Virus record (IMG/VR): IMGVR_UViG_3300034117_001582
Location: 186,001 to 250,000 of that record
DNA: 64,000 nt
Direction: 5' to 3' (one strand)
Below, in pieces: positions 1 through 35,910 of the stretch. The notes under the pieces are model-generated. The model had not been told where the DNA came from. It made no database searches and was given only the letters and a program-made list of their open reading frames with translations. Both the position numbers and the translations under genes were made by a program. The number at the start of each line of letters is the position of its first letter. The stretch's first letter is position 1.

Positions 1-3000
1 GTTCCATTTGTACCTGAAGTCCCGTTCGTACCATTTGTTCCTGATGTTCCATTAGTCCCTGATGTTCCGTTTGTTCCATTAGTCCCTGAAGTTCCATTCG
101 TTCCATTAGTTCCGCTAGTCCCATTTGTACCTGAAGTCCCGTTGGTTCCATTAGTACCATTCGTCCCTGAAGTGCCATTTGTGCCGCTAGATCCATTAGT
201 CCCAGAAGTTCCGCTAGTACCGTTAGTGCCTGAAGTACCATCTGTACCTGATGTTCCCGCAATAAATGGTGATAATGAAGTGGTTACCTGAGCAATTGTT
301 GCATCTTCAAAATAACAAGTCATTGTTTTTGCACCTAATGAGGTTGCATAGAACTTAACGACTATTCTATCACTAATATTTACCGTTGTTGCGGGTACAG
401 GTACAGAAAATAAATAAAGCTCCACAAGCGTACCGTCGCTAATGGGGTGGGGTGCCGCACTATTTGATCCAATTAAAGTTTCAGTACCACCTGTTGTTCT
501 AATATATATATCAGCATATAATTTTGGAGTACCACCATTGGAGCTCATACTAACGTAATTCTCAAAGTTCCAGTTTCCTGCGGGTATTGTGGTTATTCCT
601 GGATCACCAATAATTGTTGAAAATGAACCTATTAGTTGTGTTCCAGCACCTGTTGCCGTTAATGTTGTTCCGGCACCTATCACTATGTTTCTATCCATTA
701 CATAGTAAGTTGGAATTGTAGATGCGGATGAAGGGTTAAAATAATAAACTAAACCTGTTGAAAATCCATTCACCCCTGAAGTTCCATTAGTACCGCTGGT
801 TCCGTTCGTTCCATTTGTACCTGATGTTCCATTGGTCCCTGATGTTCCATTCGTCCCGTTTGTTCCCGATGTACCATTCGTTCCGTTAGTACCTGAGGTT
901 CCATTCGTTCCGCTAGTTCCATTTGTTCCTGAAGTCCCATTTGTACCATTTGTTCCGTTTGTTCCACTAGTCCCATCTGTTCCGTTAGTCCCCGATGTTC
1001 CGTTGGTTCCATTAGTCCCGCTAGTACCATTGGTACCTGATGTTCCTGAAGTTCCATTTGTACCTGACGTTCCATTTGCACCATTTGTTCCCGAAGTCCC
1101 ATTTGTACCATTAGTCCCATTTGTACCATTAGTTCCTGATGTTCCATTAGTCCCCGATGTGCCATTTGTTCCATTAGTTCCTGATGTACCATTAGTACCG
1201 TTAGTTCCTGAAGTCCCGTTAGTTCCTGAAGTCCCGTTTGTGCCATTTGTTCCTGACGTTCCGTTAGTTCCACTTGTACCATTGGTACCTGATGTTCCGT
1301 TAGTTCCATTAGTACCATTAGTACCATTAGTTCCTGAAGTACCATTTGTACCTGATGTACCATTCGTACCATTTGTTCCACTAGTACCATTTGTTCCCGA
1401 AGTTCCATTAGTTCCATTCGTACCTGAAGTACCTGATGTTCCATTGGTCCCTGAAGTTCCGTTTGTACCAGAAGTCCCTGAAGTACCATTTGTACCGTTA
1501 GTTCCACTTGTACCATTTGTTCCGTTAGTGCCCGATGTTCCATTAGTACCTGAAGTACCGTTTGTTCCGTTAGTTCCTGAGGTACCATTCGTTCCCGAAG
1601 TTCCATTTGTACCATTGGTTCCGCTAGTTCCGTTTGTTCCATTAGTACCTGAAGTTCCATTAGTTCCTGACGTACCATTTGTACCGTTTGTTCCCGAAGT
1701 ACCGTTTGTTCCCGAAGTACCATTTGTTCCTGATGTTCCATTAACCCCCGATATGCCACTTGTACCATTTGTTCCTGATGTTCCATTTGTACCATTTGTT
1801 CCGCTAGTACCATTCGTACCTGAAGTTCCGTTCGTTCCATTTGTACCTGAAGTGCCGTTTGTTCCATTAGTTCCTGATGTCCCATTTGTACCATTCGTTC
1901 CATTTGCTCCGCTAGTACCATTTGTACCCGAAGTTCCATCAGTACCATTAGTTCCGTTAGCACCTGAAGTACCATTTGTTCCGCTAGTACCATCCGTTCC
2001 ATCCGTTCCATTTGTACCACTAGTACCATTTAATCCGCTAGTCCCATTTGTACCTGAAGTACCATTTGTACCTGAAGTACCATTTGTACCGCTAGTACCA
2101 TTGGTACCTGATGTTCCGTTAGCACCACTAGTTCCGTCAGTTCCATTTGTGCCTGAAGTGCCATTTGCGCCGCTAGTACCGTTAGTGCCACTTGAACCAT
2201 TTGTACCATTAGTACCGTTAGTTCCTGATGTTCCATTTGCCCCTGAAGTCCCGTCTGTTCCGCTAGTTCCATTTGTACCATTAGTTCCTGATGTACCATT
2301 AGTTCCTGAAGTACCGTTTGTTCCATTAGTGCCTGATGTCCCATTTGTTCCTGAAGTTCCGTTTGTACCATTTGTTCCTGAAGTACCATTCGTACCATTC
2401 GTACCTGATGTCCCATCCGTACCATTTGTTCCTGACGTACCATTAGTACCTGAAGTCCCATTTGCTCCGCTAGTCCCATTTGTACCATTAGTTCCTGAAG
2501 TTCCATTTGTCCCTGATGAACCATCTGTTCCGCTAGTTCCATTTGTACCATTAGTTCCGTTAGTTCCGCTAGTTCCATTTGTACCATTTGTTCCTGATGT
2601 TCCGTTTGCTCCTGAAGTACCATTTGTTCCGCTAGTACCATCCGTACCATTCGTCCCCGAAGTTCCATTGGTACCGTTAGTTCCGTTTACTCCGCTAGTT
2701 CCATTTGTACCTGACGTTCCATTTGCACCATTTGTTCCCGAAGTCCCATTTGTACCATTAGTCCCATTTGTACCATTAGTCCCACTTGTACCGTTTGTGC
2801 CTGATGTACCATTTGCTCCGCTAGTACCGTTTGTGCCTGAAGTTCCGTTTGCTCCGCTAGTACCGTCAGTACCACTAGTCCCATTGGAACCATTAGTCCC
2901 TGAAGTTCCGTTAGTACCATTCGTACCGTTGGTTCCATTAGTCCCTGAAGTTCCGTTAGTACCCGATGTGCCATTAGTCCCTGAAGTTCCGTTAGTACCC

Positions 3001-4067
3001 GATGTGCCATTTGTGCCTGATGTTCCATTCGCACCACTAGTTCCATTTGTTCCGCTAGTCCCGTTTAATCCTGATGTTCCATCCGTTCCGTTTGTACCAT
3101 TTGTTCCTGAAGTTCCATTTGTTCCTGAAGACCCATTTGTTCCACTTGTTCCATTAACCCCTGATATACCACTTGTTCCATTCGTACCATTTGTTCCCGA
3201 AGTTCCGTTTGCCCCTGACGTACCATTTGTTCCCGAAGTTCCGTTTGCCCCTGACGTACCATTTGTTCCCGAAGTTCCGTTTGTACCATTAGTTCCTGAG
3301 GTACCATTTGTTCCGCTAGTTCCATTAGTACCACTAGTGCCATTTGTACCGTTTGTGCCTGAAGTTCCGTTTGCTCCGTTTGTACCTGAAGTTCCGTTTG
3401 CTCCGCTGGTACCATCCGTCCCACTTGTTCCGTTCGTGCCGTTTGCTCCGCTTGTGCCGTTGGTTCCATTAGTCCCTGAAGTTCCATTAGTACCACTAGT
3501 GCCGTTTGTACCTGAAGACCCATCCGTTCCGTTTGTACCATTTGTTCCTGAAGTTCCATTAGTTCCGCTAGTTCCTGAAGTACCGTTGGTACCTGATATA
3601 CCACTTGTTCCATTTGTACCATTTGTTCCGCTAGTACCATTAGTCCCTGATGTTCCATTTGTACCTGATGTGCCTGCAGCTCCGCTTGTTCCATTTGTCC
3701 CACTTGTACCATTAGTGCCTGATGTACCATTTGTCCCATTAGTCCCATTCGTACCTGAGGTCCCATTTGCGCCGTTAGTTCCTGATGTACCACTTGTTCC
3801 TGATGCACCAGCAGTAAATCCAGTTACCGAAACGGAATTTCCATCATTTCTTACTAAATTTAATGTTTGAGCAGATGTAACAAAAGTTCCACCTGTAACA
3901 AAAATATCTGTTGCTCCACTTAATATAAAAGACTTTAAATTATTAACATATGTATGTACCGTATCACCCGTTGCCGCAGAGAAATAAGAAACCAACGGAA
4001 CTAAGTCTGTGGCCCCTATGCCCGAGAGCGGTAAAAATGGTAATTGAGATATTTTTTTATTTGCCAT
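1..4067 (-). CDS. Giant Gly-X-Y (GTS/GTN/GAN) repeat fibre protein, putative tail/head fibre; runs off the window start
   Basis: My translation from ATG 4067: MANKKISQLPFLPLSGIG..., then ~1,010 aa of G-T-S/G-T-N triplets, a ~170-aa globular domain (nt ~260-770), then more triplets. The frame is the same at 4067, across the globular domain and at the window start, with no stop seen, which explains its absence from the ORF track. TATTTAT lies upstream (plus 4083-4089). Confidence 0.9.
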   Translation of the reverse strand, partial: MANKKISQLPFLPLSGIGATDLVPLVSYFSAATGDTVHTYVNNLKSFILSGATDIFVTGGTFVTSAQTLNLVRNDGNSVSVTGFTAGASGTSGTSGTNGANGTSGTNGTNGTNGTSGTNGTSGTNGTSGAAGTSGTNGTSGTNGTSGTNGTNGTSGISGTNGTSGTSGTNGTSGTNGTNGTDGSSGTNGTSGTNGTSGTNGTNGTSGANGTNGTSGTDGTSGANGTSGTNGANGTSGTNGTNGTSGTNGTSGTNGTSGTNGTNGTSGTNGTSGANGTSGTNGTSGANGTSGTNGTNGTSGISGVNGTSGTNGSSGTNGTSGTNGTNGTDGTSGLNGTSGTNGTSGANGTSGTNGTSGTNGTSGTNGTSGTNGTSGTNGTNGTNGTNGTSGTNGSNGTSGTDGTSGANGTSGTNGTSGANGTSGTNGTSGTNGTNGTNGTNGTSGTNGANGTSGTNGTSGVNGTNGTNGTSGTNGTDGTSGTNGTSGANGTSGTNGTNGTSGTNGTNGTNGTSGTDGSSGTNGTSGTNGTNGTSGANGTSGTNGTSGTNGTDGTSGTNGTNGTSGTNGTNGTSGTNGTSGTNGTNGTSGTNGTSGTNGTNGTSGTDGTSGANGTSGTNGTNGTNGSSGTNGTSGANGTSGTNGTDGTSGANGTSGTNGTSGTNGTSGTNGTSGTNGTSGLNGTSGTNGTDGTDGTSGTNGTSGANGTNGTDGTSGTNGTSGANGTNGTNGTSGTNGTNGTSGTNGTNGTSGTNGTSGTNGTNGTSGTNGTSGISGVNGTSGTNGTSGTNGTSGTNGTNGTSGTNGTSGTNGTNGTSGTNGTNGTSGTNGTSGTNGTNGTSGTNGTSGTNGTNGTSGTNGTNGTSGTSGTNGTSGTNGTSGTSGTNGTNGTSGTNGTSGTNGTNGTSGTNGTSGTNGTNGTNGTNGTSGTNGTSGTNGTSGTNGTNGTSGTNGTSGTNGTNGTSGTNGTNGTSGTNGTSGTNGTNGTNGTNGTSGTNGANGTSGTNGTSGTSGTNGTSGTNGTNGTSGTNGTDGTSGTNGTNGTNGTSGTNGTSGTNGTSGTNGTNGTSGTNGTNGTSGTNGTSGTNGTNGTSGTNGTSGVNGFSTGLVYYFNPSSASTIPTYYVMDRNIVIGAGTTLTATGAGTQLIGSFSTIIGDPGITTIPAGNWNFENYVSMSSNGGTPKLYADIYIRTTGGTETLIGSNSAAPHPISDGTLVELYLFSVPVPATTVNISDRIVVKFYATSLGAKTMTCYFEDATIAQVTTSLSPFIAGTSGTDGTSGTNGTSGTSGTNGSSGTNGTSGTNGTNGTNGTSGTNGTSGTNGTNGTSGTNGTNGTSGTNGTSGTNGTNGTSGTNG
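774..3809 (-). repeat. 9-bp-period coding repeat (GGN ACN TCN/AAY/AGY) encoding Gly-X-Y triplets
   Basis: Degenerate gttccattt/gtacctgaa units throughout; third codon positions vary. A second block lies at 1-258. Confidence 0.95.
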
Positions 4068-4591: not shown

Positions 4592-6517
4592 TTAAGCCGT
4601 TGGTTTTAACCCTATACCGCTAACGACATCTTGGACTTGTTTAAATTTCTCATCCATTTTAGTGGTAATATCTTTAATTGCCGGTTCGATTAACTTAGCA
4701 ACCTCTTGTTTAAATTTATTTTCATCCACACTTGCAAACATTAATCCTGAAATACCTTCTGTACCAAAACTTGTTTTGTAACCCTCCATCGCCTTTGTCG
4801 CAATCATTGCACTTAACTCATCAACTCTATTTTCTTTAATTGCTCTTTCAATAACATCTTCAGGAAGTTCTTCAAATGCTGTGAGAATCATATTATGCTC
4901 ATCTTCTTTATTTTTAACTTGGTCAGCAATTTTTTGACCCAATCTTGTTTTAATGTCCTTTAACACATTATTACCTTCAGCACCATACAATCCATTCATC
5001 ACATCCAAGAACGTTTCGTTAACGATTGTTTTATTGTAACCGGCACGTAATAACATTATTCTTTCCTCACGCAAAGTTGATTCAACAATTCTTTTTCTAT
5101 TTTTATTAATACCAACCAAAGAAAAATTATATCTTTTGTTAATTAATTTTTTTTCTTCTGAAATAATTTGTTTTTTTTCAATATGTTCAGAAACGACCTT
5201 TCTGATTGTATTAGATACTGACATAATCCTGTTTTCCTTATAAATATCTTTATTTTGTTCTAATGTGAATCTTAAACCAAATATTTTTAATTTAGAACCA
5301 ACATGTACCAATCTTTTTACCATTTGGTTTGCCCTTCTTGGGTATTTGTCTTTATATGTTAAAAAACACGACTCAACGTCTTGTCTTCTTTCAGTGATTG
5401 TCTCCTCACCACCTAAGGTATCAATAGTTTTTGAACCATCATTAACAAGTACCATATCATTATAAAAATCTCTTGTAAGTCTAATACACTGCCTTTCGGT
5501 AATGTCTTTTTGAGGTTTTGGAGGTTTTATTACAATTTTTTTAAGTTTAACTTCTATTTCGTTATTACTATTAAATTTTAAATTATATCTTTTTTTAACG
5601 GAAATATACCCTTGGTTGGTTACTTTAACAACTATTTTATCAATATCTTTAACTTCGTGTGTAACTCCACCTTTACCTGATATCAACGGGGTTGTTTCAT
5701 CGTCTCCGTAAACCTGTATATCAGAACCCATCAAAGGATTATCATTTTCATCAATAACGGAAACTTTAAAGGGTGTGGTTGTTTTGATTTTAAAATTTAC
5801 AACATTTTCATAACCCTTACGTATAATTAATTTTTTTTCAGAATTAGGGTTGTCCTCATCTCCCTTACTCATCATAGAGTTATTTAACTTGATGGTTTTT
5901 TCTATATTCTCTTTAATGTTAAAATACTTAACACCAACAGTAATGTTTAACAGTTCACCACTAGCCTCCGCATCGAATACGGGGTATTTTGTTTTATCTA
6001 AAATTATGTTAGATAACATACCATTATTATCGGTTACGTTATTTCCAAATTCAATATCAGTACGTTTATACTTTATGGTTATTGTCGCATTTGGTATAGG
6101 GGAATTAAACTCATCATTAACCTGAACAGATAATGATGTTATATCAAATGTTGTTTTTACTATTACCTCCTCAACGTTTTGTACGTCCCTAAACGTAAAG
6201 TCTTGATTATAAACTTTAGGTTGGGATAAATCAATATTCTCCACAAGATCTTCATACCCCTCATTTTTATTTGTTACTTTATATGTGTATACCCCTAATG
6301 GGATATTTTCAATTTTAAAGAAACCATTTTCGTCAGATGTCGCACCTTTAATTAATTTTTCGTTTTGAAATAATTTTACTTGTGAATTTGGAGATTTACT
6401 TGCTTTATATTTTACATAACCTTGAAGTGTAGCAAATCCATCTTCCTCGTTTAATAAACGATGAAGGGATGAAATTTGTTTTTTTTCAGTTTCAGTAAGG
6501 ATTAATTTTCTTAACAT
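4592..6517 (-). CDS. Leader-bearing 641-aa protein with carboxypeptidase-regulatory-like (transthyretin-fold) repeats and a helical C-terminal module
   Basis: LQGYVK...PNSQVKL...GATSDENGFFKIENIPLGVYT; VQVNDEFNSPIPNATITI...TDNNG; leader LTETEKKQISSLHRLLNEE; internal second leader at nt 5224. Confidence 0.65.
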   Translation of the reverse strand: MLRKLILTETEKKQISSLHRLLNEEDGFATLQGYVKYKASKSPNSQVKLFQNEKLIKGATSDENGFFKIENIPLGVYTYKVTNKNEGYEDLVENIDLSQPKVYNQDFTFRDVQNVEEVIVKTTFDITSLSVQVNDEFNSPIPNATITIKYKRTDIEFGNNVTDNNGMLSNIILDKTKYPVFDAEASGELLNITVGVKYFNIKENIEKTIKLNNSMMSKGDEDNPNSEKKLIIRKGYENVVNFKIKTTTPFKVSVIDENDNPLMGSDIQVYGDDETTPLISGKGGVTHEVKDIDKIVVKVTNQGYISVKKRYNLKFNSNNEIEVKLKKIVIKPPKPQKDITERQCIRLTRDFYNDMVLVNDGSKTIDTLGGEETITERRQDVESCFLTYKDKYPRRANQMVKRLVHVGSKLKIFGLRFTLEQNKDIYKENRIMSVSNTIRKVVSEHIEKKQIISEEKKLINKRYNFSLVGINKNRKRIVESTLREERIMLLRAGYNKTIVNETFLDVMNGLYGAEGNNVLKDIKTRLGQKIADQVKNKEDEHNMILTAFEELPEDVIERAIKENRVDELSAMIATKAMEGYKTSFGTEGISGLMFASVDENKFKQEVAKLIEPAIKDITTKMDEKFKQVQDVVSGIGLKPTA

Positions 6518-13295: not shown

Positions 13296-13627
13296 ACCTT
13301 ATAATTATTACCTGTTGGCCCCATGGTTCTTCCTGATGCCCATTTTTCACCAGCTTTACCTAACATATTACCTTTACCTCTACCAGTTTTATCCTCTCTT
13401 TTAGCACTTGTTATTGGATTACCTGGTCCTCTTCCTACTCCCGAGTCCCATGGCGTAATACTTGCTCCTGTGTCTGATGAGGTGTCTGTAGGTGCATCAC
13501 CTTCTTCATTAACCTCTTCTTCATTAACCTCTTCTTCATCCAATTCCGTTTCATCAATTTCTGCAGCATCTTTAACTTCCATAAGGAATTTAATTCTTTT
13601 AATATTATCTAAAAATTTTTTACTCAT
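13292..13627 (-). CDS. Small acidic/Gly-rich leader-bearing protein
   Basis: MSKKFLDNIKRIKFLME; acidic tract; W-x-SG-x-x-RG/MG-x-x-N-like repeats; 4-nt overlaps with both neighbours. Confidence 0.7.
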   Translation of the reverse strand: MSKKFLDNIKRIKFLMEVKDAAEIDETELDEEEVNEEEVNEEGDAPTDTSSDTGASITPWDSGVGRGPGNPITSAKREDKTGRGKGNMLGKAGEKWASGRTMGPTGNNYKV

Positions 13628-15228
13628 GCTACTATTTCAAAATTGTTAAGTTGGTTAAAAGCGTTACCTCTGGTTTCACTAGTTCCTGTACCTCCAGCGT
13701 TTAAGTCAACAAAGTAATTTATCGCATCATCTTCATTTGTAAATTCAGGAAGTTGGTCAGCGGATTTACATTTTGTAAAAAATGAGACTGCCACTTCAGC
13801 AGCAATATCAACATCATTTACAACTTCAGGGTTACTTACCAATTCCCTACCAATACAAGTACCATACTTTTCGTAATTCCCTTTAAACGTTAACCCATTA
13901 AACCCTCTTCCTCTATATTTAAAACCTTCGGTTTTTGAATTTCCAAACATACCTCCGTAAACTCGATTAAAAAATTTTTCATCGTCTGATTTTAATTCAT
14001 TTAATTCAACATCGTCAGATGGTACTCTACTTTTAAAAATTTCCCGAATTCTAGAGTTATCTGTATTACCATACCCAGTTTCATTTTGAGGGATAAACCC
14101 CGACTCTTTACCTATGACGCAAAGAATACCGACTTGGGTGTATGGGTTAGTAATCCCTTTTTTATTCATATAATCTATCATTATTTGAGCGTTTCGTCTT
14201 GTTTCACCACCTAAACCAACAATTTCAACTTTACCGTTTAAAAGTGAAACAACATTAGAAATTACACCCATTTTTATTAAGAACATAGATAAGTCTTCAT
14301 CATCAAAACCTTTAATTTTTAAATTAAAAAACATTTCCTCTAATGTTTCAGAATCCGCAATCCCCGTTTCTGGTAAATTAACGGATTTTTGATAATTATA
14401 AATCGCTTCTTGAGTGTCTCTGTCAAACTTACCGGTAATCTCTAAATCATCTGATATTGATAAGAAGTTCAGTGCTAATTGTATTTGTTCAATATCGGGT
14501 TTAAAACTACCACTACTTCTTGAGTCGTAAACGTTACCTGATTTCCACATTTCTTGAAATCTCTCTAAAAATTCATATATAGTATCAAAATCGGTAACAT
14601 CTTCACCACTAATATCAACATTATCTTTTTCTATGAACGGTAAGTCTTCTATTTTTGGTTCTATATCAATTTCAAAATCAGAAACATTTTGAAATAACGC
14701 ACTATCAATTTCATTTTTTAAGTTATTAATTTTATCATTACTAAACCCTAAACCATAATCTATAGAATCATATGACCCTAAAACATCTGCACCATTTTTA
14801 GTAAATGTCTGATAAAATAATTTTGATTCATCTTCTAACTCTTTAAAATCTTCCTTTTCTTCACCACCATAAAAATAATCCTCATCAACAATACCTTTAA
14901 TGATGTTAATATTTGCCCTTGGAAATGTTTTATTTAATGCGTCAATTAAAAATGGTATGTTTTTTTTATTTTTAAATTTATCATTAACCCCAATAGACAC
15001 AAAAACATGGTCTACGTAAGGCATTGGGGATTGGTCTGTTAGTTGATTTAACAATTTATCTATTGTCATATCATCGTTTACTAAGTTTGGTAAACTGATA
15101 AAATCATCACTTTCTAAATAACCTATAAGGCGGTCACCTATTAATACAACCTTAACTGGCGACTCGATATCCTCCTTAAGGTTTGACAATCTTTTAAAGT
15201 TTTTTATTTCATGTAAAATAGTTTTCAT
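13624..15228 (-). CDS. GH19-family lytic glycosidase with a peptidoglycan-binding domain and a degenerate SGNH-like N-terminal domain
   Basis: PG-binding IQLALNFL...TGKFDRDTQEAIYNYQ...TGIAD; GH19 KESG...YRGRGFNGLTFKGNY...NPEVV...AAEVAVSFF; N-terminal IGDR...SIGVND. Confidence 0.8.
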   Translation of the reverse strand: MKTILHEIKNFKRLSNLKEDIESPVKVVLIGDRLIGYLESDDFISLPNLVNDDMTIDKLLNQLTDQSPMPYVDHVFVSIGVNDKFKNKKNIPFLIDALNKTFPRANINIIKGIVDEDYFYGGEEKEDFKELEDESKLFYQTFTKNGADVLGSYDSIDYGLGFSNDKINNLKNEIDSALFQNVSDFEIDIEPKIEDLPFIEKDNVDISGEDVTDFDTIYEFLERFQEMWKSGNVYDSRSSGSFKPDIEQIQLALNFLSISDDLEITGKFDRDTQEAIYNYQKSVNLPETGIADSETLEEMFFNLKIKGFDDEDLSMFLIKMGVISNVVSLLNGKVEIVGLGGETRRNAQIMIDYMNKKGITNPYTQVGILCVIGKESGFIPQNETGYGNTDNSRIREIFKSRVPSDDVELNELKSDDEKFFNRVYGGMFGNSKTEGFKYRGRGFNGLTFKGNYEKYGTCIGRELVSNPEVVNDVDIAAEVAVSFFTKCKSADQLPEFTNEDDAINYFVDLNAGGTGTSETRGNAFNQLNNFEIVA

Positions 15229-29649: not shown

Positions 29650-29680
29650 TTTGTTCATTTAGAAAAATGCATTATTTTTG
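29650..29680 (+). promoter_or_regulatory. Bacteroidetes-type promoter
   Basis: TTTG 29650-53, N19, TATTTTTG 29673-80. Confidence 0.7.
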
Positions 29681-29709
29681 TATAAATAACTAATCAGCCC
29701 CACATAACC

Positions 29710-30366
29710 ATGAAAACTTTAGTTCTTGTTCTTTTTGTTTTATCTTATCTTTCTTTGAATTCTCAGGTTAATACCGATTCTATTGAATCAATTATGATAC
29801 AATTAATCAGAAAAGATAGGGGGTTAAAAGGGACTACTTATTTATACACATCAGAAAGATGTAAAAAAGTGTCTAAGATTCATTTGGATTATACCATGAA
29901 GTATCTTAACGCAGATATGTACTCGCACAATGAAACAATACCTTTTTACAGTAAAAAGGTTTTACGTTCTCCGTCAGATAGATACTCACTTTTTGATAAA
30001 GATTCCGTAACTATAAAAGTTATGGATGACCTTTATAAAAAAGTAACTCTTTGGTGTTATGACGCAGAAATCATGACAGGTTGCTATGTTACGGATATTA
30101 ATGAACCTAACATCAATAAAATAATTGCTGAAAAATTGTTTATGAAATTTAAAAACTCACCAACACATTATAAGTCAATGGTTCAAAACCCAACTGACGG
30201 TCAAATTTATAGAGGTAATTTCTCAATTAGTTATAAAAAAGAAATGATTAATGGTGTAGAATATTATAGTTTTGACTGCGTTGGTGTTTTTGACGAATCA
30301 AGATACTACCCATCAGAAACAAATCGTTATAAAAAAAGTAAAGAAAGTAATTTTTATTTTGACTAA
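29710..30366 (+). CDS. Secreted CAP (SCP/Tpx-1/Ag5)-like protein
   Basis: Signal peptide ..SLNSQ; YSHNE...AEI...FKNSPTHYKSM. Confidence 0.6.
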   Translation: MKTLVLVLFVLSYLSLNSQVNTDSIESIMIQLIRKDRGLKGTTYLYTSERCKKVSKIHLDYTMKYLNADMYSHNETIPFYSKKVLRSPSDRYSLFDKDSVTIKVMDDLYKKVTLWCYDAEIMTGCYVTDINEPNINKIIAEKLFMKFKNSPTHYKSMVQNPTDGQIYRGNFSISYKKEMINGVEYYSFDCVGVFDESRYYPSETNRYKKSKESNFYFD

Positions 30367-30370
30367 AAAT

Positions 30371-32137
30371 TTATCTGATTAAATCTGAGTTCATATCCTC
30401 GTCGGCATATTTTTCAAACCTTGGCTCCTTTAAATAATCCACTTTAGGTGGGAATCTTCCACAATATTTAGGGATTGATGCGAACCAATAGTTTTTTAAT
30501 CTTGCATATTTTTTACCTCCGTACGTTATTACTTCATTTGTGTGTGTCGTTAACGGGACTTTGGTCCCGTACGCATTTTCACAAGATTGTCCACCTCTAC
30601 GATCACTCGCACCCATATATGGATCCATAAAGTCGCTGTTAGCGTTCATCAACGAAACAGCATTACCGTAAGAAAAACTATTATCGAACGATACCATATC
30701 GAATGTATTGGTTTTACCTAACTCATCGGTAATAGTTAAACTATTATTATTTACGGTAGCGTTTGACACAAAGTCATCAAACTCTTCAGGAATTTTTAAA
30801 TAATCAACATAATCCATTCTTAAATAAACACCTTTAGTTGCGTTAGTAAAATTACTATTTGGTAATTCCGCAGATATTGCAATTGGACCTAAAGTTTCAT
30901 CTGATTGTTCAAACAATCTCATTTGTCCATTTACCCCCATTTTAATATCAACAGGATTATATTTGGCTTGATATTCTATTTGTCTATTGAATTTTTCTTT
31001 AGTCTTTTCTTTATATTTAATTTCATCGGCAGGATTAATAATTTCTAATTCAGGAGCATTCGCAACTAAAAGCATACTTCGGTATTTTGAACCTCTTTTA
31101 GATTCGCCCTGACCTAGGTAACTTATAGGTGTCATCTCATTTATAGTGATTTTAACTCCTGTTTGTTTTTCTATCTCATCAATTAGTAAAACCGCATAAT
31201 TATGTGCCCTACTTTTTGCTAAGTATAAGTTCATTTTTTCTAATTCTTCTTTTGTTTGTGGATTGTTTTTGTTAGGTCTCCTTACTCCCCCATAATTGTG
31301 GTCAATTACTGTGTAACCTGCAGGTGATTTCCATGTTGGGTTTGCAGAGTCGGCTTGACCTTGTATTGTTACGTTTGTTAAATTTTTTGCACCACCCGCT
31401 TCTATATAGTCTACAAAATCTTTAACAATAATATTAAATTCATTTTTAGCTGAAGGATATTTTTTAAAATCAACATTAACAATATTATCAGGAAATGCTC
31501 TATAATCAGAATTGACCTCAAATTTGTCTAATGTTGGTTTGTCTTTGATAGGTTCTAATTCGGGTTTAGGTTCAGTTCCAGGTTTTTTAACGTTAAACGC
31601 TTCAGAAGTTCCCGCAAAAATATACCCCATACTTTTTCCAACGTTATAAGCATTTGGATATTGTGAGGTACCTAAAAATAATGTTCCTGAATTTTTACCT
31701 AACCAATTTGCCCCTTCTAAATTTTGTTTTACCTCCCTATCATTTGCCCTTTTATTACGTCTTGTATCCCTTCTAGATAAATCACTATTTTTATCTTTAT
31801 TTTTATCAACCACAACTTTTGTATTGTCCATAGCAATATATCCGTCACATTGGACAAGTTTTGGAGTACCATTAGGGTGTGATTCACTAAATAACTTACT
31901 TAAATCAGACGAAGTAAAAATATTCATTTTTTTACCAAATTCGGTTGGTTGGAAATTACCGTCTTCAAAAATACCTATCGGAGTTTGTTCACCGTCTTCA
32001 GCAACATAACAATATTGTTTACGGTCTTTTTTTTCCGTTAACGTTATTTTTGAATAATTTTCTGATAGGGTAACATTACTATCGTAATTAACCATTAGTT
32101 TAAATCTTTTTATATCTTCTAAAAGTCTGTTGTTCAT
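30371..32137 (-). CDS. Leader-bearing protein with an OmpA_C-like motif
   Basis: MNNRLLEDIKRFKLMVNY...LSEN; VTIQGQADS...NLYLAKSRAHN; start reset to 32137 with TATTTAT upstream. Confidence 0.6.
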   Translation of the reverse strand: MNNRLLEDIKRFKLMVNYDSNVTLSENYSKITLTEKKDRKQYCYVAEDGEQTPIGIFEDGNFQPTEFGKKMNIFTSSDLSKLFSESHPNGTPKLVQCDGYIAMDNTKVVVDKNKDKNSDLSRRDTRRNKRANDREVKQNLEGANWLGKNSGTLFLGTSQYPNAYNVGKSMGYIFAGTSEAFNVKKPGTEPKPELEPIKDKPTLDKFEVNSDYRAFPDNIVNVDFKKYPSAKNEFNIIVKDFVDYIEAGGAKNLTNVTIQGQADSANPTWKSPAGYTVIDHNYGGVRRPNKNNPQTKEELEKMNLYLAKSRAHNYAVLLIDEIEKQTGVKITINEMTPISYLGQGESKRGSKYRSMLLVANAPELEIINPADEIKYKEKTKEKFNRQIEYQAKYNPVDIKMGVNGQMRLFEQSDETLGPIAISAELPNSNFTNATKGVYLRMDYVDYLKIPEEFDDFVSNATVNNNSLTITDELGKTNTFDMVSFDNSFSYGNAVSLMNANSDFMDPYMGASDRRGGQSCENAYGTKVPLTTHTNEVITYGGKKYARLKNYWFASIPKYCGRFPPKVDYLKEPRFEKYADEDMNSDLIR

Positions 32138-32178
32138 AAATCTTTTTTTAATAAATATAAAATAATTACAAAAAATGT

Positions 32179-32209
32179 TTTGTAGATTCAAAAAAGTGTA
32201 CTATATTTG
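32179..32209 (+). promoter_or_regulatory. Bacteroidetes-type promoter
   Basis: TTTG 32179-82, N19, TATATTTG 32202-09. Confidence 0.75.
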
Positions 32210-32237
32210 TAGTATAACCAATTAAAACCATATAACC

Positions 32238-32771
32238 ATGAAAAATTTATCTCTTATTCTTTTTGTTTTTATTTCACAAGTATTATTCTCACAAGTTACT
32301 TACGATGCTAACGATCCGTTTTCAAAAATCACAAAACAAAGTGTGGAATTAGTTACTGGTGCCGATTATGTTACCATGAGTAAAACATTAATGAACGAAA
32401 TAAACACATACCGTTTACAAAATGGTTTACCTAAATTGGCTTATGATGAAAAAATGTTTACATACTCTAAATTGTACGCCGACAGTATGACATCAACAAA
32501 CACTTATAATCACAGTGATTTGAATGGTGGTGAATACAAATTGGAAAATATTAACCTATTGAAAACTGTTGGTACATTTTTATTTTTAGATGAAAAAATG
32601 GTTAAAAGTATTCCAACTACAATCTTAAATTCATGGGAATCTTCTCCAGGTCACAACGCAAACCTTTTGAGTAAAGATGTTACAAAAGTTGGTATTGCAA
32701 TATCATCAGTTGTATATATGAAAAACGGGTTTTACGTTTACGACATAAAAGCGGTAATGGTTGCTAAATAA
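32238..32771 (+). CDS. Secreted CAP-domain protein
   Basis: Signal peptide ..VLFSQ; NEINTYRLQNGLPKL...YNHSD...ENI...WESSPGHNANLL...VGIA. Confidence 0.88.
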   Translation: MKNLSLILFVFISQVLFSQVTYDANDPFSKITKQSVELVTGADYVTMSKTLMNEINTYRLQNGLPKLAYDEKMFTYSKLYADSMTSTNTYNHSDLNGGEYKLENINLLKTVGTFLFLDEKMVKSIPTTILNSWESSPGHNANLLSKDVTKVGIAISSVVYMKNGFYVYDIKAVMVAK

Positions 32772-32827
32772 GTAACCATTACCATTTTGGATAATCGGTT
32801 AATCGATCACCACTACGTATAGTCCTT

Positions 32828-34675
32828 TTAACCCCAATTTGGACAATCTGTTGATCGACCACCACTAGGTATAAACCCTCTAGGAAACCTTTTACCAAAT
32901 TTAATCTTACCAATTTTTGGCCAATTAATTTCAATTTTTTTCCTCCTTGCCCAAGTAATTTCACCACTAAAATCACCTGCAGTTGCCATTACGTACTCTC
33001 CTGTTGGTGTTACTGTTGCTAACTCTTCAGGGGCTATTAATTGTATGGATATACCAACCGATGATTTTCTATATCCAGCATAAGTTATTTCATAATCATC
33101 TTTAAGTGATTGGTCATTTGCTCTTGAAGCATAAAACTGTCTTGGTGTTAACTTTTTATTCTTATATGCCGCTTGATATAATGGGCCATAAGATTCAATA
33201 CCATATTTTGTTCCGTAGTTTTCACCACCCATACTTTCCCATTCAGGGCCTTTGTTGGCCTCTGATTGTTTAACTAATGTCATAATTTTATTGGTAATTG
33301 GTTCATCATCTTTGTCAGTCATATCTCCAAGAATACTATTTAAAAGTTCTTTAAACTTTAAATCCATAGCGGTTAATCTTGCATTTGCCAATTTATTATT
33401 GTTTGCCTTACTAAAAAACTTTTTTGTTTTAAACGCGTCTCCAGTACCAAAAGAAGTGTTTACCGCACTGGTTGCAGCATAACTACCAACACCAATACTT
33501 ACAATAGTAACCTTTTCTTTACCATATCGTTTTTGTAAATCAGAAATAAGTAGTTTTACTTTATCTGCAAGACCCTCCATAGCAGTAACGGCATCACTAC
33601 CAATATTTGTCCTATCATCACCAAAAAAGTTATCTGCTTGTTTGTTTTTTGTCGCTTGGTCGGCGTTTTCATCAGGGTATGAAAAATTTATAACTCGTAA
33701 CAATTCAATTGTTGTTTTGGTTCCAACACCGGATTCTTGACCCACAGCCGTTGCCTCTCCCTCAATAAATTCAATATAATCCGCCTCGGCAACAACGCTA
33801 GGTATATTTAATTCAATTAACTTACCTTTTCTAATTCCGTCTCTACTTTCAGGATTTTGCATTTTTTGATTCACCAAATTTTGGATGTCAGTTAATATTT
33901 TAAGTCTTGACGTATCATCGGCTGAAACATCAATATTTAGGGAATATTTTTTGTTCTTTCCCGTTAATATTGATTGAATAAAAGTTTTAGACGTGGTTGC
34001 GTTTATTACGTCTTGGTCCGTATACCCACCTTTAGTGTAAAAACCCAATAATTTAGTATTTGTATTTGGTAGGTCCTTGGTTTTAATAAACTTATCTAAA
34101 GATAAATTAAGGTCCTTTAAATTTTTATCGGATATGTATATTTTTTGAGCGATAGCGGCGGTAATCGATTTAGGTATCATAGCAAGTTGAGCTTTAACCT
34201 TACCATCGATTTCTGAAGTACCATTTAATTGGTCCACAACTTGTGTTTGATATTTATCGGCGTATGCTTTCATTCCCGCATCATCTCCAACAGGCACATA
34301 ATCACCATTCCACACGGCTTCAGCGCCGCGTAATCCATACCAAGGATCTTTACTTACCCATATATAAAGAGACTTTTTAACATCCTCATCAGACATTTTC
34401 TTTTTGTTATTTTTATACCATTCCATAATTGGCATATAAATTTGTAATTTAGAGTACGGTCTTAAGGAGTCCCTTGCAATAACATAATTAATAAATTGGT
34501 CGGTGTTTGCTTCCCAAAAGTCAGTCGTACCACTATTAGACCAATCGTATTTAGAAAGGTCAGGTTCTTTAGTTTCGTCTTCTTCAGTTAAAAATCTTTT
34601 ACCCGCAGCATTATAATGCATTTCAAGTATTTTGGCCTTTTCTTTATGCGATACCTCAAATAAATTTTTTTTCAT
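32828..34675 (-). CDS. 615-aa leader-bearing protein with a divergent OmpA_C-like motif
   Basis: VSHKEKAKILEMH...FLTEED; SIGVGSYAATS...NNKLANARLTAM. Confidence 0.5.
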   Translation of the reverse strand: MKKNLFEVSHKEKAKILEMHYNAAGKRFLTEEDETKEPDLSKYDWSNSGTTDFWEANTDQFINYVIARDSLRPYSKLQIYMPIMEWYKNNKKKMSDEDVKKSLYIWVSKDPWYGLRGAEAVWNGDYVPVGDDAGMKAYADKYQTQVVDQLNGTSEIDGKVKAQLAMIPKSITAAIAQKIYISDKNLKDLNLSLDKFIKTKDLPNTNTKLLGFYTKGGYTDQDVINATTSKTFIQSILTGKNKKYSLNIDVSADDTSRLKILTDIQNLVNQKMQNPESRDGIRKGKLIELNIPSVVAEADYIEFIEGEATAVGQESGVGTKTTIELLRVINFSYPDENADQATKNKQADNFFGDDRTNIGSDAVTAMEGLADKVKLLISDLQKRYGKEKVTIVSIGVGSYAATSAVNTSFGTGDAFKTKKFFSKANNNKLANARLTAMDLKFKELLNSILGDMTDKDDEPITNKIMTLVKQSEANKGPEWESMGGENYGTKYGIESYGPLYQAAYKNKKLTPRQFYASRANDQSLKDDYEITYAGYRKSSVGISIQLIAPEELATVTPTGEYVMATAGDFSGEITWARRKKIEINWPKIGKIKFGKRFPRGFIPSGGRSTDCPNWG

Positions 34676-34699
34676 AATATTAATATTTTATAATAAATA

Positions 34700-34879
34700 T
34701 CACAATCTAGATAAACGATTCATAATATCTCTAACTTTAGATTCTAAAACTCGAATTCTCTGGATTTGTTCTTGATTTAATTCAAAACTTTCACCTTTAA
34801 CGGCGCTAATTTCATTAGATAATTTTGTGTGTTCAAACATCATTTGATTATACACTTGGGCTTTTTGTTCATTTGTCAT
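34700..34879 (-). CDS. 59-aa coiled-coil protein (below the ORF-track cutoff)
   Basis: My translation: MTNEQKAQVYNQMMFEHTKLSNEISAVKGESFELNQEQIQRIRVLESKVRDIMNRLSRL*; TATTTAT upstream. Confidence 0.65.
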   Translation of the reverse strand: MTNEQKAQVYNQMMFEHTKLSNEISAVKGESFELNQEQIQRIRVLESKVRDIMNRLSRL

Positions 34880-34932: not shown

Positions 34933-35910
34933 TTATAATCCTTTTTTATATGTGGTATTAACTCGAGTGTTATCAGGAATATTACCCGCAGGGATATATA
35001 TATCGCCTTTATTATATTGTTGATAATCCGTTTTCATCACCGGTTTCACATCTTTTTCAACTGCGTTGTGATATTTTTTGGTTATGACAGGATACTTCCC
35101 ACCGTCTCCCCACGTTAAATGTGATGATGAAGGATTTCGTGGATTACCATCCTTGTCTATAAACCCAAACCAACTATATTTGGTATTGTTCGTTAAACTT
35201 AAATGAAAATGAGGACCTGATGCCGCACCTGATGGGTTAAGTCTTTCATTTATAAACCCAATTCTATTTCCATACTTACGACTCGACATAATACTAATTA
35301 CCGCTTCTTCAATTTTTTTGTCATTCACGTTATTCATACCGGCTGTTGGTACAACATCTATTGCGTCGCCAGTTTTATGAGCACTATTGTAGGAAAGCTT
35401 GGTATGAAACTTATCATTTCCTCCTGTTATTTCTAAGTCTAATCCGCTTAAATCGCTTATATCTTTAGCCAAATCAATTAATTCTACATTAAAATTAAAT
35501 CCATCAAATAATCCTGAAACAATTTCAGGAACAAATGTATTATAAGCGCTAGGTAAAACGTCTTTAATTTTTTGTAACTGAATATTGTTCACAACGTCAC
35601 CCCAACGGGTTTGATTTTTAGTGGTTGACGCTTTATCTTTTAATTTTAACCCTTTATTCAAGGCATAATTTACAATTTTAATTGAATCTGAAACGTGTTT
35701 ATTTAAAGTAATATCTGTTTTACAACATTTAATACTATTTGTGCCGTCAGGACATGGGCATCTTACCTCTTCATTTAAGACATAAGTATTAATTGTTCCA
35801 GATTTATATTTTATAAAAGTTGAGAAATTTTCAGTAACGATTTTTAAAGTTTCTGTATATTGGTTTTTAATTTCTTCTATTTCTTTTTTTGTTATTAATA
35901 TTTTTTTCAA
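34933..35910 (-). CDS. Peptidase M15-like (LAS/Hedgehog fold) zinc peptidase with leader (TTG start)
   Basis: ITGGND...SAHKTGDAIDV...GPHFHLS; leader MKKILITKKEIEEIKNQY...VTE. Confidence 0.7.
   Translation of the reverse strand: MKKILITKKEIEEIKNQYTETLKIVTENFSTFIKYKSGTINTYVLNEEVRCPCPDGTNSIKCCKTDITLNKHVSDSIKIVNYALNKGLKLKDKASTTKNQTRWGDVVNNIQLQKIKDVLPSAYNTFVPEIVSGLFDGFNFNVELIDLAKDISDLSGLDLEITGGNDKFHTKLSYNSAHKTGDAIDVVPTAGMNNVNDKKIEEAVISIMSSRKYGNRIGFINERLNPSGAASGPHFHLSLTNNTKYSWFGFIDKDGNPRNPSSSHLTWGDGGKYPVITKKYHNAVEKDVKPVMKTDYQQYNKGDIYIPAGNIPDNTRVNTTYKKGL

What the first reader, a model, noticed from the sequence alone, without database searches (positions are those of the whole stretch)
29650..34675. 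Duplicated convergent pair: host-promoter secreted CAP protein facing a leader-bearing OmpA_C-like protein
Seen twice in tandem: [TTTG-N19-TAnnTTTG, ATAACC-ATG, signal peptide ..SQ, CAP-like] on the plus strand (29710, 32238) converging on a ~600-aa minus-strand leader protein with a G.AD/S...N..LA..R motif (30371, 32828). Established: OmpA_C domains bind peptidoglycan. Inference: an effector/partner pairing in which an early periplasmic CAP protein binds or neutralises a virion-delivered wall-binding protein, possibly for superinfection exclusion.
Basis: partly seen in the sequence, partly recalled or inferred. Interest (0 to 1): 0.6.

Follow-up and report, generated by a model that had tools for sequence, protein, structure and literature searches.

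The report
Co-varying phage CAP / OmpA-like gene pairs
A lake-water jumbo phage of Bacteroidota carries two neighbouring two-gene cassettes, each a small exported CAP-family protein facing a about 600-residue protein with a peptidoglycan-anchor (OmpA-like) fold; related phages gain, lose and swap each cassette as a unit, which points to specific partner pairs, though binding itself is not shown.

Summary
At 29650-34675 two plus-strand genes (P1 29710-30366, P3 32238-32771) each have a Bacteroidota-type promoter (TTTG-N19-TAnnTTTG), the same ATAACC-ATG start context and a signal peptide ending ..S|Q. Each converges on a large minus-strand gene (P2 30371-32137, 588 aa; P4 32828-34675, 615 aa).

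- **CAP:** P3 is a Pfam CAP protein. P1 is a divergent CAP relative, reached only through profile searches.
- **OmpA-like fold:** Pfam OmpA misses P2 and P4. AlphaFold models of both contain an OmpA_C-like fold (Z up to 10.6 and 8.5). An exhaustive PDB comparison agrees for both, and the ESM Atlas search agrees for P4.
- **Not a recent duplication:** P2 and P4 share no detectable sequence similarity.

The new evidence is comparative. Every related locus with room has the same convergent partner. Either pair can be absent without the other. Divergence is tightly correlated within a pair (r = 0.95 and 0.92) but not between pairs, nor between adjacent non-partners (r = -0.10).

Each pair is therefore a cognate cassette with several old allele types. 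Physical binding (complex prediction gave no verdict), virion delivery and superinfection exclusion remain inferences. The closest analogue is T4 Spackle-gp5.

The parts
29650..29680 (+). Bacteroidota-type promoter (-33 TTTG, 19 nt, -7 TAnnTTTG) of P1
   Evidence: The same motif at the same distance lies upstream of the P1 orthologue in L002.
29710..30366 (+). P1: 218-aa exported protein, a divergent CAP-superfamily member. The signal peptide is cleaved before Q19 (inferred).
   Evidence: No direct Pfam hit. Profile search and hhalign link it to CAP, and Atlas features give 24 of 30 hits in CAP clusters. H73, E120, S150 and H153 are conserved. The N-terminus is the only hydrophobic segment.
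30371..32137 (-). P2: 588-aa leader-bearing protein. No signal peptide or membrane segment.
   Evidence: AlphaFold model has pLDDT 75. Its stop lies 4 nt from the P1 stop.
31043..31540 (-). OmpA_C-like domain of P2 (residues about 200-365), with an insertion of about 35 residues between G-x-A-D and N-x-x-L-A-x-x-R-A
   Evidence: VIA-align Z 10.6 (5m38_C, rmsd 2.7, 110 of 114 residues) and 95 chains at Z >= 8. In the exhaustive search the top 33 rows are all OmpA-like, after which Z drops to 6.0. Foldseek agrees. D263 and R310 are invariant.
32090..32137 (-). N-terminal leader of P2 (helix at residues 3-16, type L-L-E-D-I-K-R-F-K-L-M)
   Evidence: The first 100 residues are 74% identical to those of about 800-aa PG_binding_1 proteins of related phages.
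32149..32157 (-). Phage-type promoter-like motif TATTTATWA, 20 nt before the P2 start
   Evidence: The genome has 95 copies, and 37 lie within 60 nt upstream of ORFs (27% of leader genes, 8% of other genes, 0.8% expected).
32179..32209 (+). Bacteroidota-type promoter of P3, back to back with the P2 promoter motif
   Evidence: Conserved in L002, L004 and L009 although the CAP proteins there are only 30-71% identical.
32238..32771 (+). P3: 177-aa exported CAP-family protein with no cysteines. The signal peptide is cleaved before Q19 (inferred).
   Evidence: Pfam CAP 1.6e-14 and PHROG 16914. H92, S93, E103, N104, W133, S136, G138 and H139 are invariant across 12 orthologues.
32753..32783 (+). 13-bp stem hairpin over the P3 stop codon, in the 56-nt gap between the convergent genes (terminator-like)
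32828..34675 (-). P4: 615-aa leader-bearing protein. It has a helical N-terminal half, an OmpA_C-like domain and a basic disordered tail ending in an invariant C-P.
   Evidence: AlphaFold model has pLDDT 77 and pTM 0.67.
33035..33709 (-). OmpA_C-like domain of P4 (residues about 323-547, with a large insertion)
   Evidence: VIA-align Z 8.5 (3td3_A, 118 of 120 residues). In the exhaustive search the top 17 rows are OmpA-like. Foldseek agrees, and Atlas structure hits are OmpA clusters. R433 is kept, but the aspartate position is S403.
34691..34699 (-). Phage-type promoter-like motif TATTTATWA, 24 nt before the P4 start

Best explanation
Each pair is a cognate two-gene cassette.

The small gene is read from a host-type (Bacteroidota sigma-A) promoter. 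Its product is exported by Sec, cut before Q19 and stays in the periplasm as a CAP-fold protein.

The large gene is read from a phage-type promoter. Its product has an N-terminal leader, no export signal and a peptidoglycan-anchor (OmpA_C-like) domain. It can therefore meet the wall only if it is carried in the virion and released into the periplasm of the next host.

I propose that the periplasmic CAP protein specifically recognises its own large partner when a sibling or related phage tries to enter an already infected cell, and blocks it. This would be superinfection exclusion of the T4 Spackle-gp5 kind, with several specificity types.

Shown: the folds; the promoter classes; the signal-peptide features; conserved adjacency; and joint gain, loss and allele swapping of the two partners.

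Inferred: early timing, virion delivery, physical binding and the exclusion phenotype.
For: 1. Folds. CAP is supported for P3 and P1. The OmpA_C-like fold is supported for P2 and P4.

2. Adjacency. All 12 P4-like loci with room downstream have a convergent CAP gene, and so do two pairs in G003. Every P2-like locus has a convergent P1-like gene. This includes loci whose other genes are unrelated to the window: L008 and L011 and L078.

3. Unit behaviour.
- Pair 1 is absent from L009 and from the complete 158-kb genome G002, which still have pair 2.
- Pair 2 is absent from L005-L007, which have pair 1.
- Between the window and L002 the flanking genes are 46-92% identical and P2/P1 are 76/73%, but P4/CAP are 27/32%.

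4. Correlation of identities. P4 against its CAP gives r = 0.95 over 55 locus pairs. P2 against P1 gives r = 0.92 over 10. P4 against P2 gives r = -0.10. CAP against its other neighbour P2 gives r = -0.10.

5. Two promoter classes sit back to back.

6. The export signal with Q at +1 fits the Bacteroidetes Q-rule (PMC5837995). P2 and P4 have no hydrophobic segment.

7. Other leader proteins of this genome also carry wall-directed domains without export signals. One has PG_binding_1 plus GH19, and a leaderless paralogue exists elsewhere. The genome also encodes a T4 gp21-type prohead protease.

8. All four genes are under purifying selection within allele types, with omega 0.03-0.32.

9. T4 Spackle, an early periplasmic protein, binds and inhibits the virion-borne wall-active protein gp5 (PMC7677548, PMC7650644).
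Against: - The only interaction test gave no verdict (ipSAE 0.00), so binding has no direct support.
- Nothing shows that P2 or P4 are in virions. No cultured relative exists.
- The leader occurs on at least 49 ORFs, which is many for packaged proteins.
- Adjacent convergent genes with 1-56 nt between their stops, flanked by conserved promoter regions, would co-vary through linkage alone.
- The CAP cavity residues (His, Glu, His) are invariant. This suggests a small-ligand or metal site rather than a purely protein-binding role.
- P4 has serine where OmpA domains have the peptidoglycan-binding aspartate.
- CAP genes of unrelated phages have no such partner.
Confidence: 0.35

Rival explanations
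1. Linkage without binding. The CAP proteins are independent periplasmic accessory proteins (morons) acting on a small ligand, lipid or the wall. The large proteins are variable virion or envelope-facing proteins. They co-vary only because they lie tail to tail, with recombination confined to the conserved promoter regions on either side.
For: - The gaps between stops are 4 and 56 nt.
- The intergenic promoter region is nearly identical in the window, L002 and L004 while the coding regions differ.
- The invariant His/Glu/His of the CAP cavity points to a ligand site.
- Other plus-strand singletons in this arm are host-like accessory genes: FKBP, UvrC-like and PAP2.
- Complex prediction gave no support.
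Against: - The same two folds are paired twice here, twice in G003, and in phages whose neighbouring genes are unrelated.
- The CAP gene has two equally close neighbours yet follows only its convergent partner.
- Linkage alone does not explain why the partner is an OmpA-like leader protein each time.
Confidence: 0.25
2. Self-directed partner. The CAP protein acts on the phage's own ejected protein during its own infection. It might seal or dismantle the entry conduit after DNA passage, or protect the infected cell's wall from the incoming protein's activity (an immunity function), rather than excluding later phages.
For: It rests on the same fold, localisation and co-variation evidence. The host-type promoter would allow expression straight after entry. 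Ejected proteins are known to form trans-periplasmic conduits in P22 (PMC8402733) and in a T7-like podophage (PMC11440229).
Against: No enzymatic or pore-forming domain was found in P2 or P4 outside the OmpA-like fold. There is no timing data. This reading cannot be separated from exclusion by sequence alone.
Confidence: 0.17
3. Lysis module. The exported small protein and the wall-binding large protein act together at the end of infection, for example as a spanin-like or wall-tethering pair.
For: Wall-active genes lie nearby or share the leader. A third CAP-like gene lies about 950 nt from a PG_binding_1 plus GH19-like lysin gene at G000:6651-7487.
Against: The small proteins have no lipobox cysteine after the signal peptide (P3 has no cysteine at all), so they are not outer-membrane lipoprotein spanins. 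The large proteins have no membrane anchor. A host-type promoter and the presence of two to three polymorphic copies are not typical of lysis genes.
Confidence: 0.05

Closest known systems
T4 Spackle (gp61.3) and the tail lysozyme gp5 (PMC7677548, PMC7650644)
   Same: An early phage protein with a signal peptide sits in the periplasm and targets a wall-active protein brought in by the virion of a superinfecting phage of the same kind.
   Different: Spackle has no relation to CAP. gp5 is a lysozyme, not an OmpA-like anchor. The T4 genes are not adjacent and are not known as swapped allele pairs. Binding and exclusion are shown for T4 and not here.
OmpA_C-like peptidoglycan anchors (OmpA, Pal, MotB, TagL, YfiB, PorE; Pfam PF00691)
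   Same: The fold covers the whole reference domain. P2 keeps the aspartate and arginine of the G-x-T-D ... N-x-x-L-S-x-x-R-A motif.
   Different: The Pfam model does not match. There are large insertions, no signal peptide and no membrane or lipid anchor. The domain is embedded in about 600-residue phage proteins with a leader. P4 has serine at the aspartate position.
Bacterial and phage CAP/SCP proteins (Pfam PF00188; PHROG 16914, labelled 'sporulation protein')
   Same: P3 is a clear member. P1 is a remote one. The conserved His/Glu/His positions are present.
   Different: As far as I know, no function is established for bacterial or phage CAP proteins. A fixed pairing with an OmpA-like protein did not turn up in my literature searches. 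CAP genes in unrelated phages lack the partner.
Polymorphic cognate cassettes (toxin-immunity, colicin-immunity)
   Same: Adjacent genes are exchanged as a unit. There are several old allele types at 25-40% identity, purifying selection within types, and conserved junctions.
   Different: No toxin domain was found. One partner is exported and the other is not. The context is phage structural or entry genes.
T4 internal proteins with a capsid-targeting sequence cut by the gp21 protease
   Same: Short N-terminal leaders containing (L/I)-x-E occur on many proteins, and a gp21-type protease gene (Peptidase_S77) is present.
   Different: The leaders here are longer and fall into at least five families. 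Cleavage and packaging are untested.

Membership tests
CAP superfamily (PF00188) | Match to the Pfam model above the gathering score | tested here: met
   P3 scores 55.2 bits against a cut-off of 21.1, E 1.6e-14. P1 on its own has no match.
CAP superfamily (PF00188) | For P1: homology shown through intermediates or profiles | tested here: met
   The A3 profile reaches P0080 at E 2e-12 across the whole library, and P0080 hits Pfam CAP at 7.7e-10. 17 of 29 members of A5 hit CAP. hhalign of A5 against A4 gives 99.4%, E 6.6e-22 over 152 columns. A5 itself contains CAP proteins, so the hhalign value is not independent.
CAP superfamily (PF00188) | Conserved cavity residues (His, Glu, His) | tested here: met
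   P3 family: H92, E103 and H139 are invariant. P1 family: H73, E120 and H153 are invariant or nearly so.
OmpA_C-like domain (PF00691) | Match to the Pfam sequence model | tested here: not met
   No hit at E <= 1 for the full proteins or the excised domains. A bacterial Pal from L033 scored 4.4e-21 in the same run.
OmpA_C-like domain (PF00691) | The beta-alpha-beta-alpha-beta-beta fold covering the whole domain | tested here: met
   P2: Z 10.6, with 110 of 114 residues aligned, and the exhaustive search agrees. P4: Z 8.5, with 118 of 120 aligned, and Atlas agrees. The models are predictions with pLDDT 75-77.
OmpA_C-like domain (PF00691) | Peptidoglycan-contacting aspartate and arginine | tested here: inconclusive
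   P2 has D263 and R310 invariant in motif register. The aspartate aligns with that of Pal. P4 keeps R433 but has S403 at the aspartate position. The register was taken from motifs, not from a residue-level structural alignment.
OmpA_C-like domain (PF00691) | Binding to peptidoglycan | not testable with these tools
   Needs a sacculus pull-down.
Spackle-type superinfection exclusion | Periplasmic protein made early | tested here: inconclusive
   Signal peptide features and a host-type promoter are present. There is no timing data. RNA-library contigs touch all four genes but give neither strand nor level.
Spackle-type superinfection exclusion | Binds a virion-borne wall-active protein | tested here: inconclusive
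   Complex prediction gave no verdict. The co-variation is indirect.
Spackle-type superinfection exclusion | Exclusion phenotype | not testable with these tools
   No cultured phage or host exists.
Two-component spanin | Outer-membrane lipoprotein with a lipobox cysteine, plus an inner-membrane-anchored partner | tested here: not met
   P3 has no cysteine, P1 has no lipobox, and P2 and P4 have no hydrophobic segment.

The most novel reading that the evidence does not exclude
Phage CAP-domain proteins are allele-specific periplasmic binders of virion-delivered OmpA-like entry proteins. Together they would form a polymorphic self-recognition (superinfection exclusion) system with at least five specificity types, carried in one to three copies per genome in freshwater Bacteroidota jumbo phages. 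This would be the first defined function and protein target for a prokaryotic CAP protein.
Probability: 0.25. Interest if true: 0.8.

Novelty: new variant of a known kind. Interest (0 to 1): 0.62.

Why it matters
CAP/SCP proteins are widespread in bacteria and phages, yet as far as I know no prokaryotic one has a defined function. A fixed, co-varying partner gives a concrete and testable target.

Very little is known about entry, ejected proteins and superinfection exclusion in phages of Bacteroidota. These cassettes, together with the leader families and the two promoter classes, offer a way in for an abundant, uncultured lake-water phage group.

If the pairs are specific binders with several natural allele types, they would also be a ready-made set of orthogonal protein-protein recognition pairs.

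Tried and rejected
- **Complex prediction of P4 with mature P3:** no verdict (score 0.00, mark 0.32). This counts neither for nor against binding. Only one job was allowed, so the P2+P1 pair and swapped pairs were not run.
- **Sequence similarity between the pairs:** BLAST and hhalign of P2 against P4 found nothing. P1 against P3 by BLAST, and the shallow profile A3 against A4, matched only the signal peptide.
- **PDB sequence and profile searches:** nothing useful for P1, P2, P3 or P4.
- **Related loci and cultured phages:** single-sequence searches in viral contigs found nothing, and the A1 profile found none there either. GenBank phages hold no relative of the region, P2 or P4, and only one weak CAP hit.
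- **Other domains of P2 and P4:** the N-terminal beta domain and C-terminal beta-rich domain of P2, and the helical half of P4, have no convincing structural match.
- **Candidate further partner types:** these sit beside CAP genes in L067 (397 aa), L068 (436 aa) and L077 (381 aa). Two contain an N-x-x-L-A-x-x-R motif, but Pfam and hhalign are not significant. They are leads only.
- **Literature:** searches for the leader motif and for a CAP-phage-periplasm link found nothing relevant.
- **Spanin reading:** rejected, because there is no lipobox and no membrane anchor.
- **Recent tandem duplication:** rejected.
Full report
**Setting.** The window is bases 186001-250000 of a 291,867-bp virus record judged 99% complete. 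It has about 30% G+C, and lake-water metagenomes hold it. Nothing similar exists among GenBank phages. About nine in ten genes in this arm lie on the minus strand.

**Check of the observation.**
- Four ORFs fill 29710-34675: P1 (29710-30366, +, 218 aa), P2 (30371-32137, -, 588 aa from the ATG that matches its relatives), P3 (32238-32771, +, 177 aa) and P4 (32828-34675, -, 615 aa).
- Both plus-strand genes have TTTG-N19-TAnnTTTG ending 29-30 nt before an ATG preceded by ATAACC.
- The pattern is not rare in this A+T-rich window (8 found, 4.6 expected). Its position is what matters, and it is conserved before the orthologues in three related contigs.
- TAnnTTTG is the known Bacteroidota -7 element (for example PMC7366714).
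- Both small proteins begin MK, then carry the only hydrophobic segment found in any of the four proteins, then S-Q.
- Q19 is invariant or nearly so in both families. This fits the Bacteroidetes Q-rule for signal peptidase I substrates (PMC5837995).

**The small proteins.**
- P3 is a Pfam CAP protein (E 1.6e-14; PHROG 16914).
- P1 has no direct Pfam, PDB or P3 similarity beyond the signal peptide.
- A profile of its family, searched against 1.8 billion representatives, reaches proteins that are Pfam CAP members. The widened profile aligns to the P3 family at 99.4% probability, and language-model features point the same way.
- P1 is therefore a remote CAP relative that keeps the His/Glu/His positions.
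- A third, weak CAP-like gene lies at genome position 5132-5704, about 950 nt from a PG_binding_1 plus GH19-like lysin gene.

**The large proteins.**
- Neither matches Pfam, PHROGs or PDB by sequence. They are unrelated to each other by BLAST and by profile comparison.
- Each has its own family of metagenomic relatives.
- AlphaFold models built on those alignments have pLDDT 75 and 77.
- For both models, nearly every top Foldseek hit in the PDB is an OmpA_C-like domain.
- VIA-align places the domain at residues about 200-365 of P2 (Z up to 10.6, full coverage of the reference domains). In P4 it lies at about 323-547, with a large insertion (Z 8.5).
- An exhaustive comparison that does not rely on Foldseek agrees, and so does the ESM Atlas for P4.
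P2 keeps both the aspartate and the arginine as invariant residues. P4 keeps the arginine but has an invariant serine at the aspartate position.
- The Pfam OmpA model does not match even the excised domains. Membership is therefore at the level of fold, not of the sequence family.
- Neither protein has a signal peptide or membrane segment.

**Comparative evidence, the main new result.**
- Every locus with a P4-like gene and room downstream has a convergent CAP gene. That is 12 loci, plus two such pairs in one 24-kb contig, one of them with two CAP genes.
- The one apparent exception, L033, has a CAP remnant cut off where the contig switches to bacterial DNA.
- Every P2-like locus has a convergent P1-like gene.
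- The pairs occur independently. L009 and the complete 158-kb genome G002 have pair 2 but no P2 family. L005-L007 have pair 1 only.
- In L008, L011 and L078 the surrounding genes are unrelated to the window's.
- Between the window and L002 the flanking genes are 46-92% identical and P2/P1 are 76/73%, yet P4/CAP are 27/32%.
- Across loci, identity of P4 and of its CAP correlate at r = 0.95 (55 comparisons), and P2 and P1 at r = 0.92 (10). P4 against P2 gives r = -0.10.
- The CAP gene against P2, its other immediate neighbour, also gives r = -0.10.
- There are at least five P4/CAP allele types, 25-40% identical to each other. Within types all four genes are under purifying selection (omega 0.03-0.32), and the partners have similar synonymous distances.
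- The pattern is old allele types exchanged as whole cassettes at conserved promoter junctions.

**Promoters and leaders.**
- P2 and P4 each have TATTTATWA 20-24 nt before the start. This motif has 95 genomic copies. Thirty-seven lie just upstream of ORFs, before 27% of leader genes against 0.8% expected.
- The small and large genes therefore use different promoter classes, back to back in the P3-P2 spacer.
- At least 49 of 352 ORFs, almost all on the minus strand between 180 and 280 kb, begin with one of about five leader types.
- One leader protein carries PG_binding_1 plus GH19, while a leaderless version of that architecture lies elsewhere.
- The first 100 residues of P2 are 74% identical to those of about 800-aa PG_binding_1 proteins. 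These sit in the block of large leader proteins in related phages.
- The genome encodes a T4 gp21-type prohead protease.
- Wall-directed domains without export signals, a shared leader and such a protease make packaging into the virion and release on infection the most economical reading. This is inference.

**Mechanism.**
- The best reading is a cognate pair. A periplasmic CAP protein, made from a host-type promoter, recognises the matching OmpA-like protein delivered by an incoming virion.
- The nearest known analogue is T4 Spackle acting on gp5 (PMC7677548).
- Independence of the two pairs within one genome argues against both simply tracking the host envelope.
- The main rival is pure linkage of two unrelated functions. 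Self-directed sealing or immunity cannot be told apart from exclusion by sequence. A lysis role is unlikely.

**Novelty.** The folds are known, and phage OmpA-like proteins exist. I found no description of a conserved, co-varying CAP/OmpA-like pair. As far as I know no function is defined for a prokaryotic CAP protein.

**Expression.** Contigs from two lake metatranscriptome libraries overlap all four genes. Contigs give no strand or level, and DNA carry-over cannot be excluded.

Noticed in passing
whole genome, mainly G000:180000-280000; window 4592-63855: At least 49 of 352 ORFs (47 on the minus strand) start with one of about five N-terminal leader types, for example NLQENIRRIQ.MM, RLTESDL.RIV.RV, IIITE.QY, S..EK..IL..H and LIR.ILKEE. 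In internal control segments only 1 of 241 matched. All types contain (L/I)-x-E, the T4 gp21 cleavage motif, but this is partly by construction of the patterns.
   Followed up: partly
G000:154931-155350 (-), outside the window: T4 gp21-type prohead protease (Pfam Peptidase_S77, E 5.5e-26, above the cut-off).
   Followed up: no
window 32149-32157, 34691-34699 and many other gene starts: Phage-type promoter-like motif TATTTATWA. The genome has 95 copies, 37 of them within 60 nt upstream of ORFs, often just after a terminator hairpin of the preceding gene.
   Followed up: partly
window 13624-15228 (-) and G000:6651-7487 (+): A leader-bearing 534-aa protein has PG_binding_1 plus Glyco_hydro_19. 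A leaderless 278-aa protein that by eye has the same architecture lies elsewhere. These may be a virion-associated lysin and an endolysin.
   Followed up: partly
window 31838-32137 (-), P2 residues 1-100: The N-terminal 100 residues of P2 are 74% identical to the N-termini of about 800-aa PG_binding_1 proteins (P0028-P0031). These lie in the block of large leader proteins of related phages (L075). The N-terminal module appears to be swapped between different wall-binding proteins.
   Followed up: partly
G000:5132-5704 (+), outside the window: A third CAP-like gene (190 aa, signal peptide ending S-Q-Q; E 2.4e-4 to P3). It converges on a 203-aa protein with an N-terminal hydrophobic segment, not on an OmpA-like leader protein.
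   Followed up: partly
G000:99876-100121 (-), in an open frame of 2148 aa: Weak Pfam OmpA match (E 1.3e-4, below the cut-off) inside a giant ORF. This may be a third OmpA-like domain in the genome.
   Followed up: no
window 32828-32950 (-), P4 C-terminus: The P4 family ends in a disordered, very basic tail (pLDDT 30-36) with an invariant Cys-Pro three residues from the end. Its function is unknown.
   Followed up: no
window 34933-35910 (-): A 325-aa leader protein next to P4 contains S-x-H-x-x-G-x-A-x-D and a later H-x-H. This resembles LAS-type (M15) peptidoglycan peptidases, but Pfam gives no hit.
   Followed up: partly
window 34700-34879 (-): A 59-aa ORF that looks like a coiled coil (by eye) lies between P4 and the 325-aa gene, with its own TATTTATWA motif upstream. 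It is probably a real small gene.
   Followed up: no
L078 (G003:1-12000): Another phage contig carries two P4-like/CAP pairs within 8 kb, one of them with two tandem CAP genes. The whole pair has therefore been multiplied more than once.
   Followed up: partly
L067 2705-4360; L068 4001-5921; L077 3874-5805: In more distant phages, CAP-like genes with signal peptides lie next to other leader-bearing proteins (397, 436 and 381 aa). The orientations are co-directional, convergent and divergent. Two of the partners carry an N-x-x-L-A-x-x-R motif, but the fold was not tested.
   Followed up: partly
L033 4831-5888: The metagenome contig switches from phage sequence (a CAP remnant) to G+C-richer DNA encoding a bacterial Pal-type lipoprotein (Pfam OmpA 4.4e-21). 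This is probably an assembly chimera.
   Followed up: no
window 832-3870 (+): A 1012-aa open frame made of V-P-F/L-V-P repeats lies in the only G+C-rich part of the window (43-45%). It may be the wrong strand of a repeat-protein gene.
   Followed up: no
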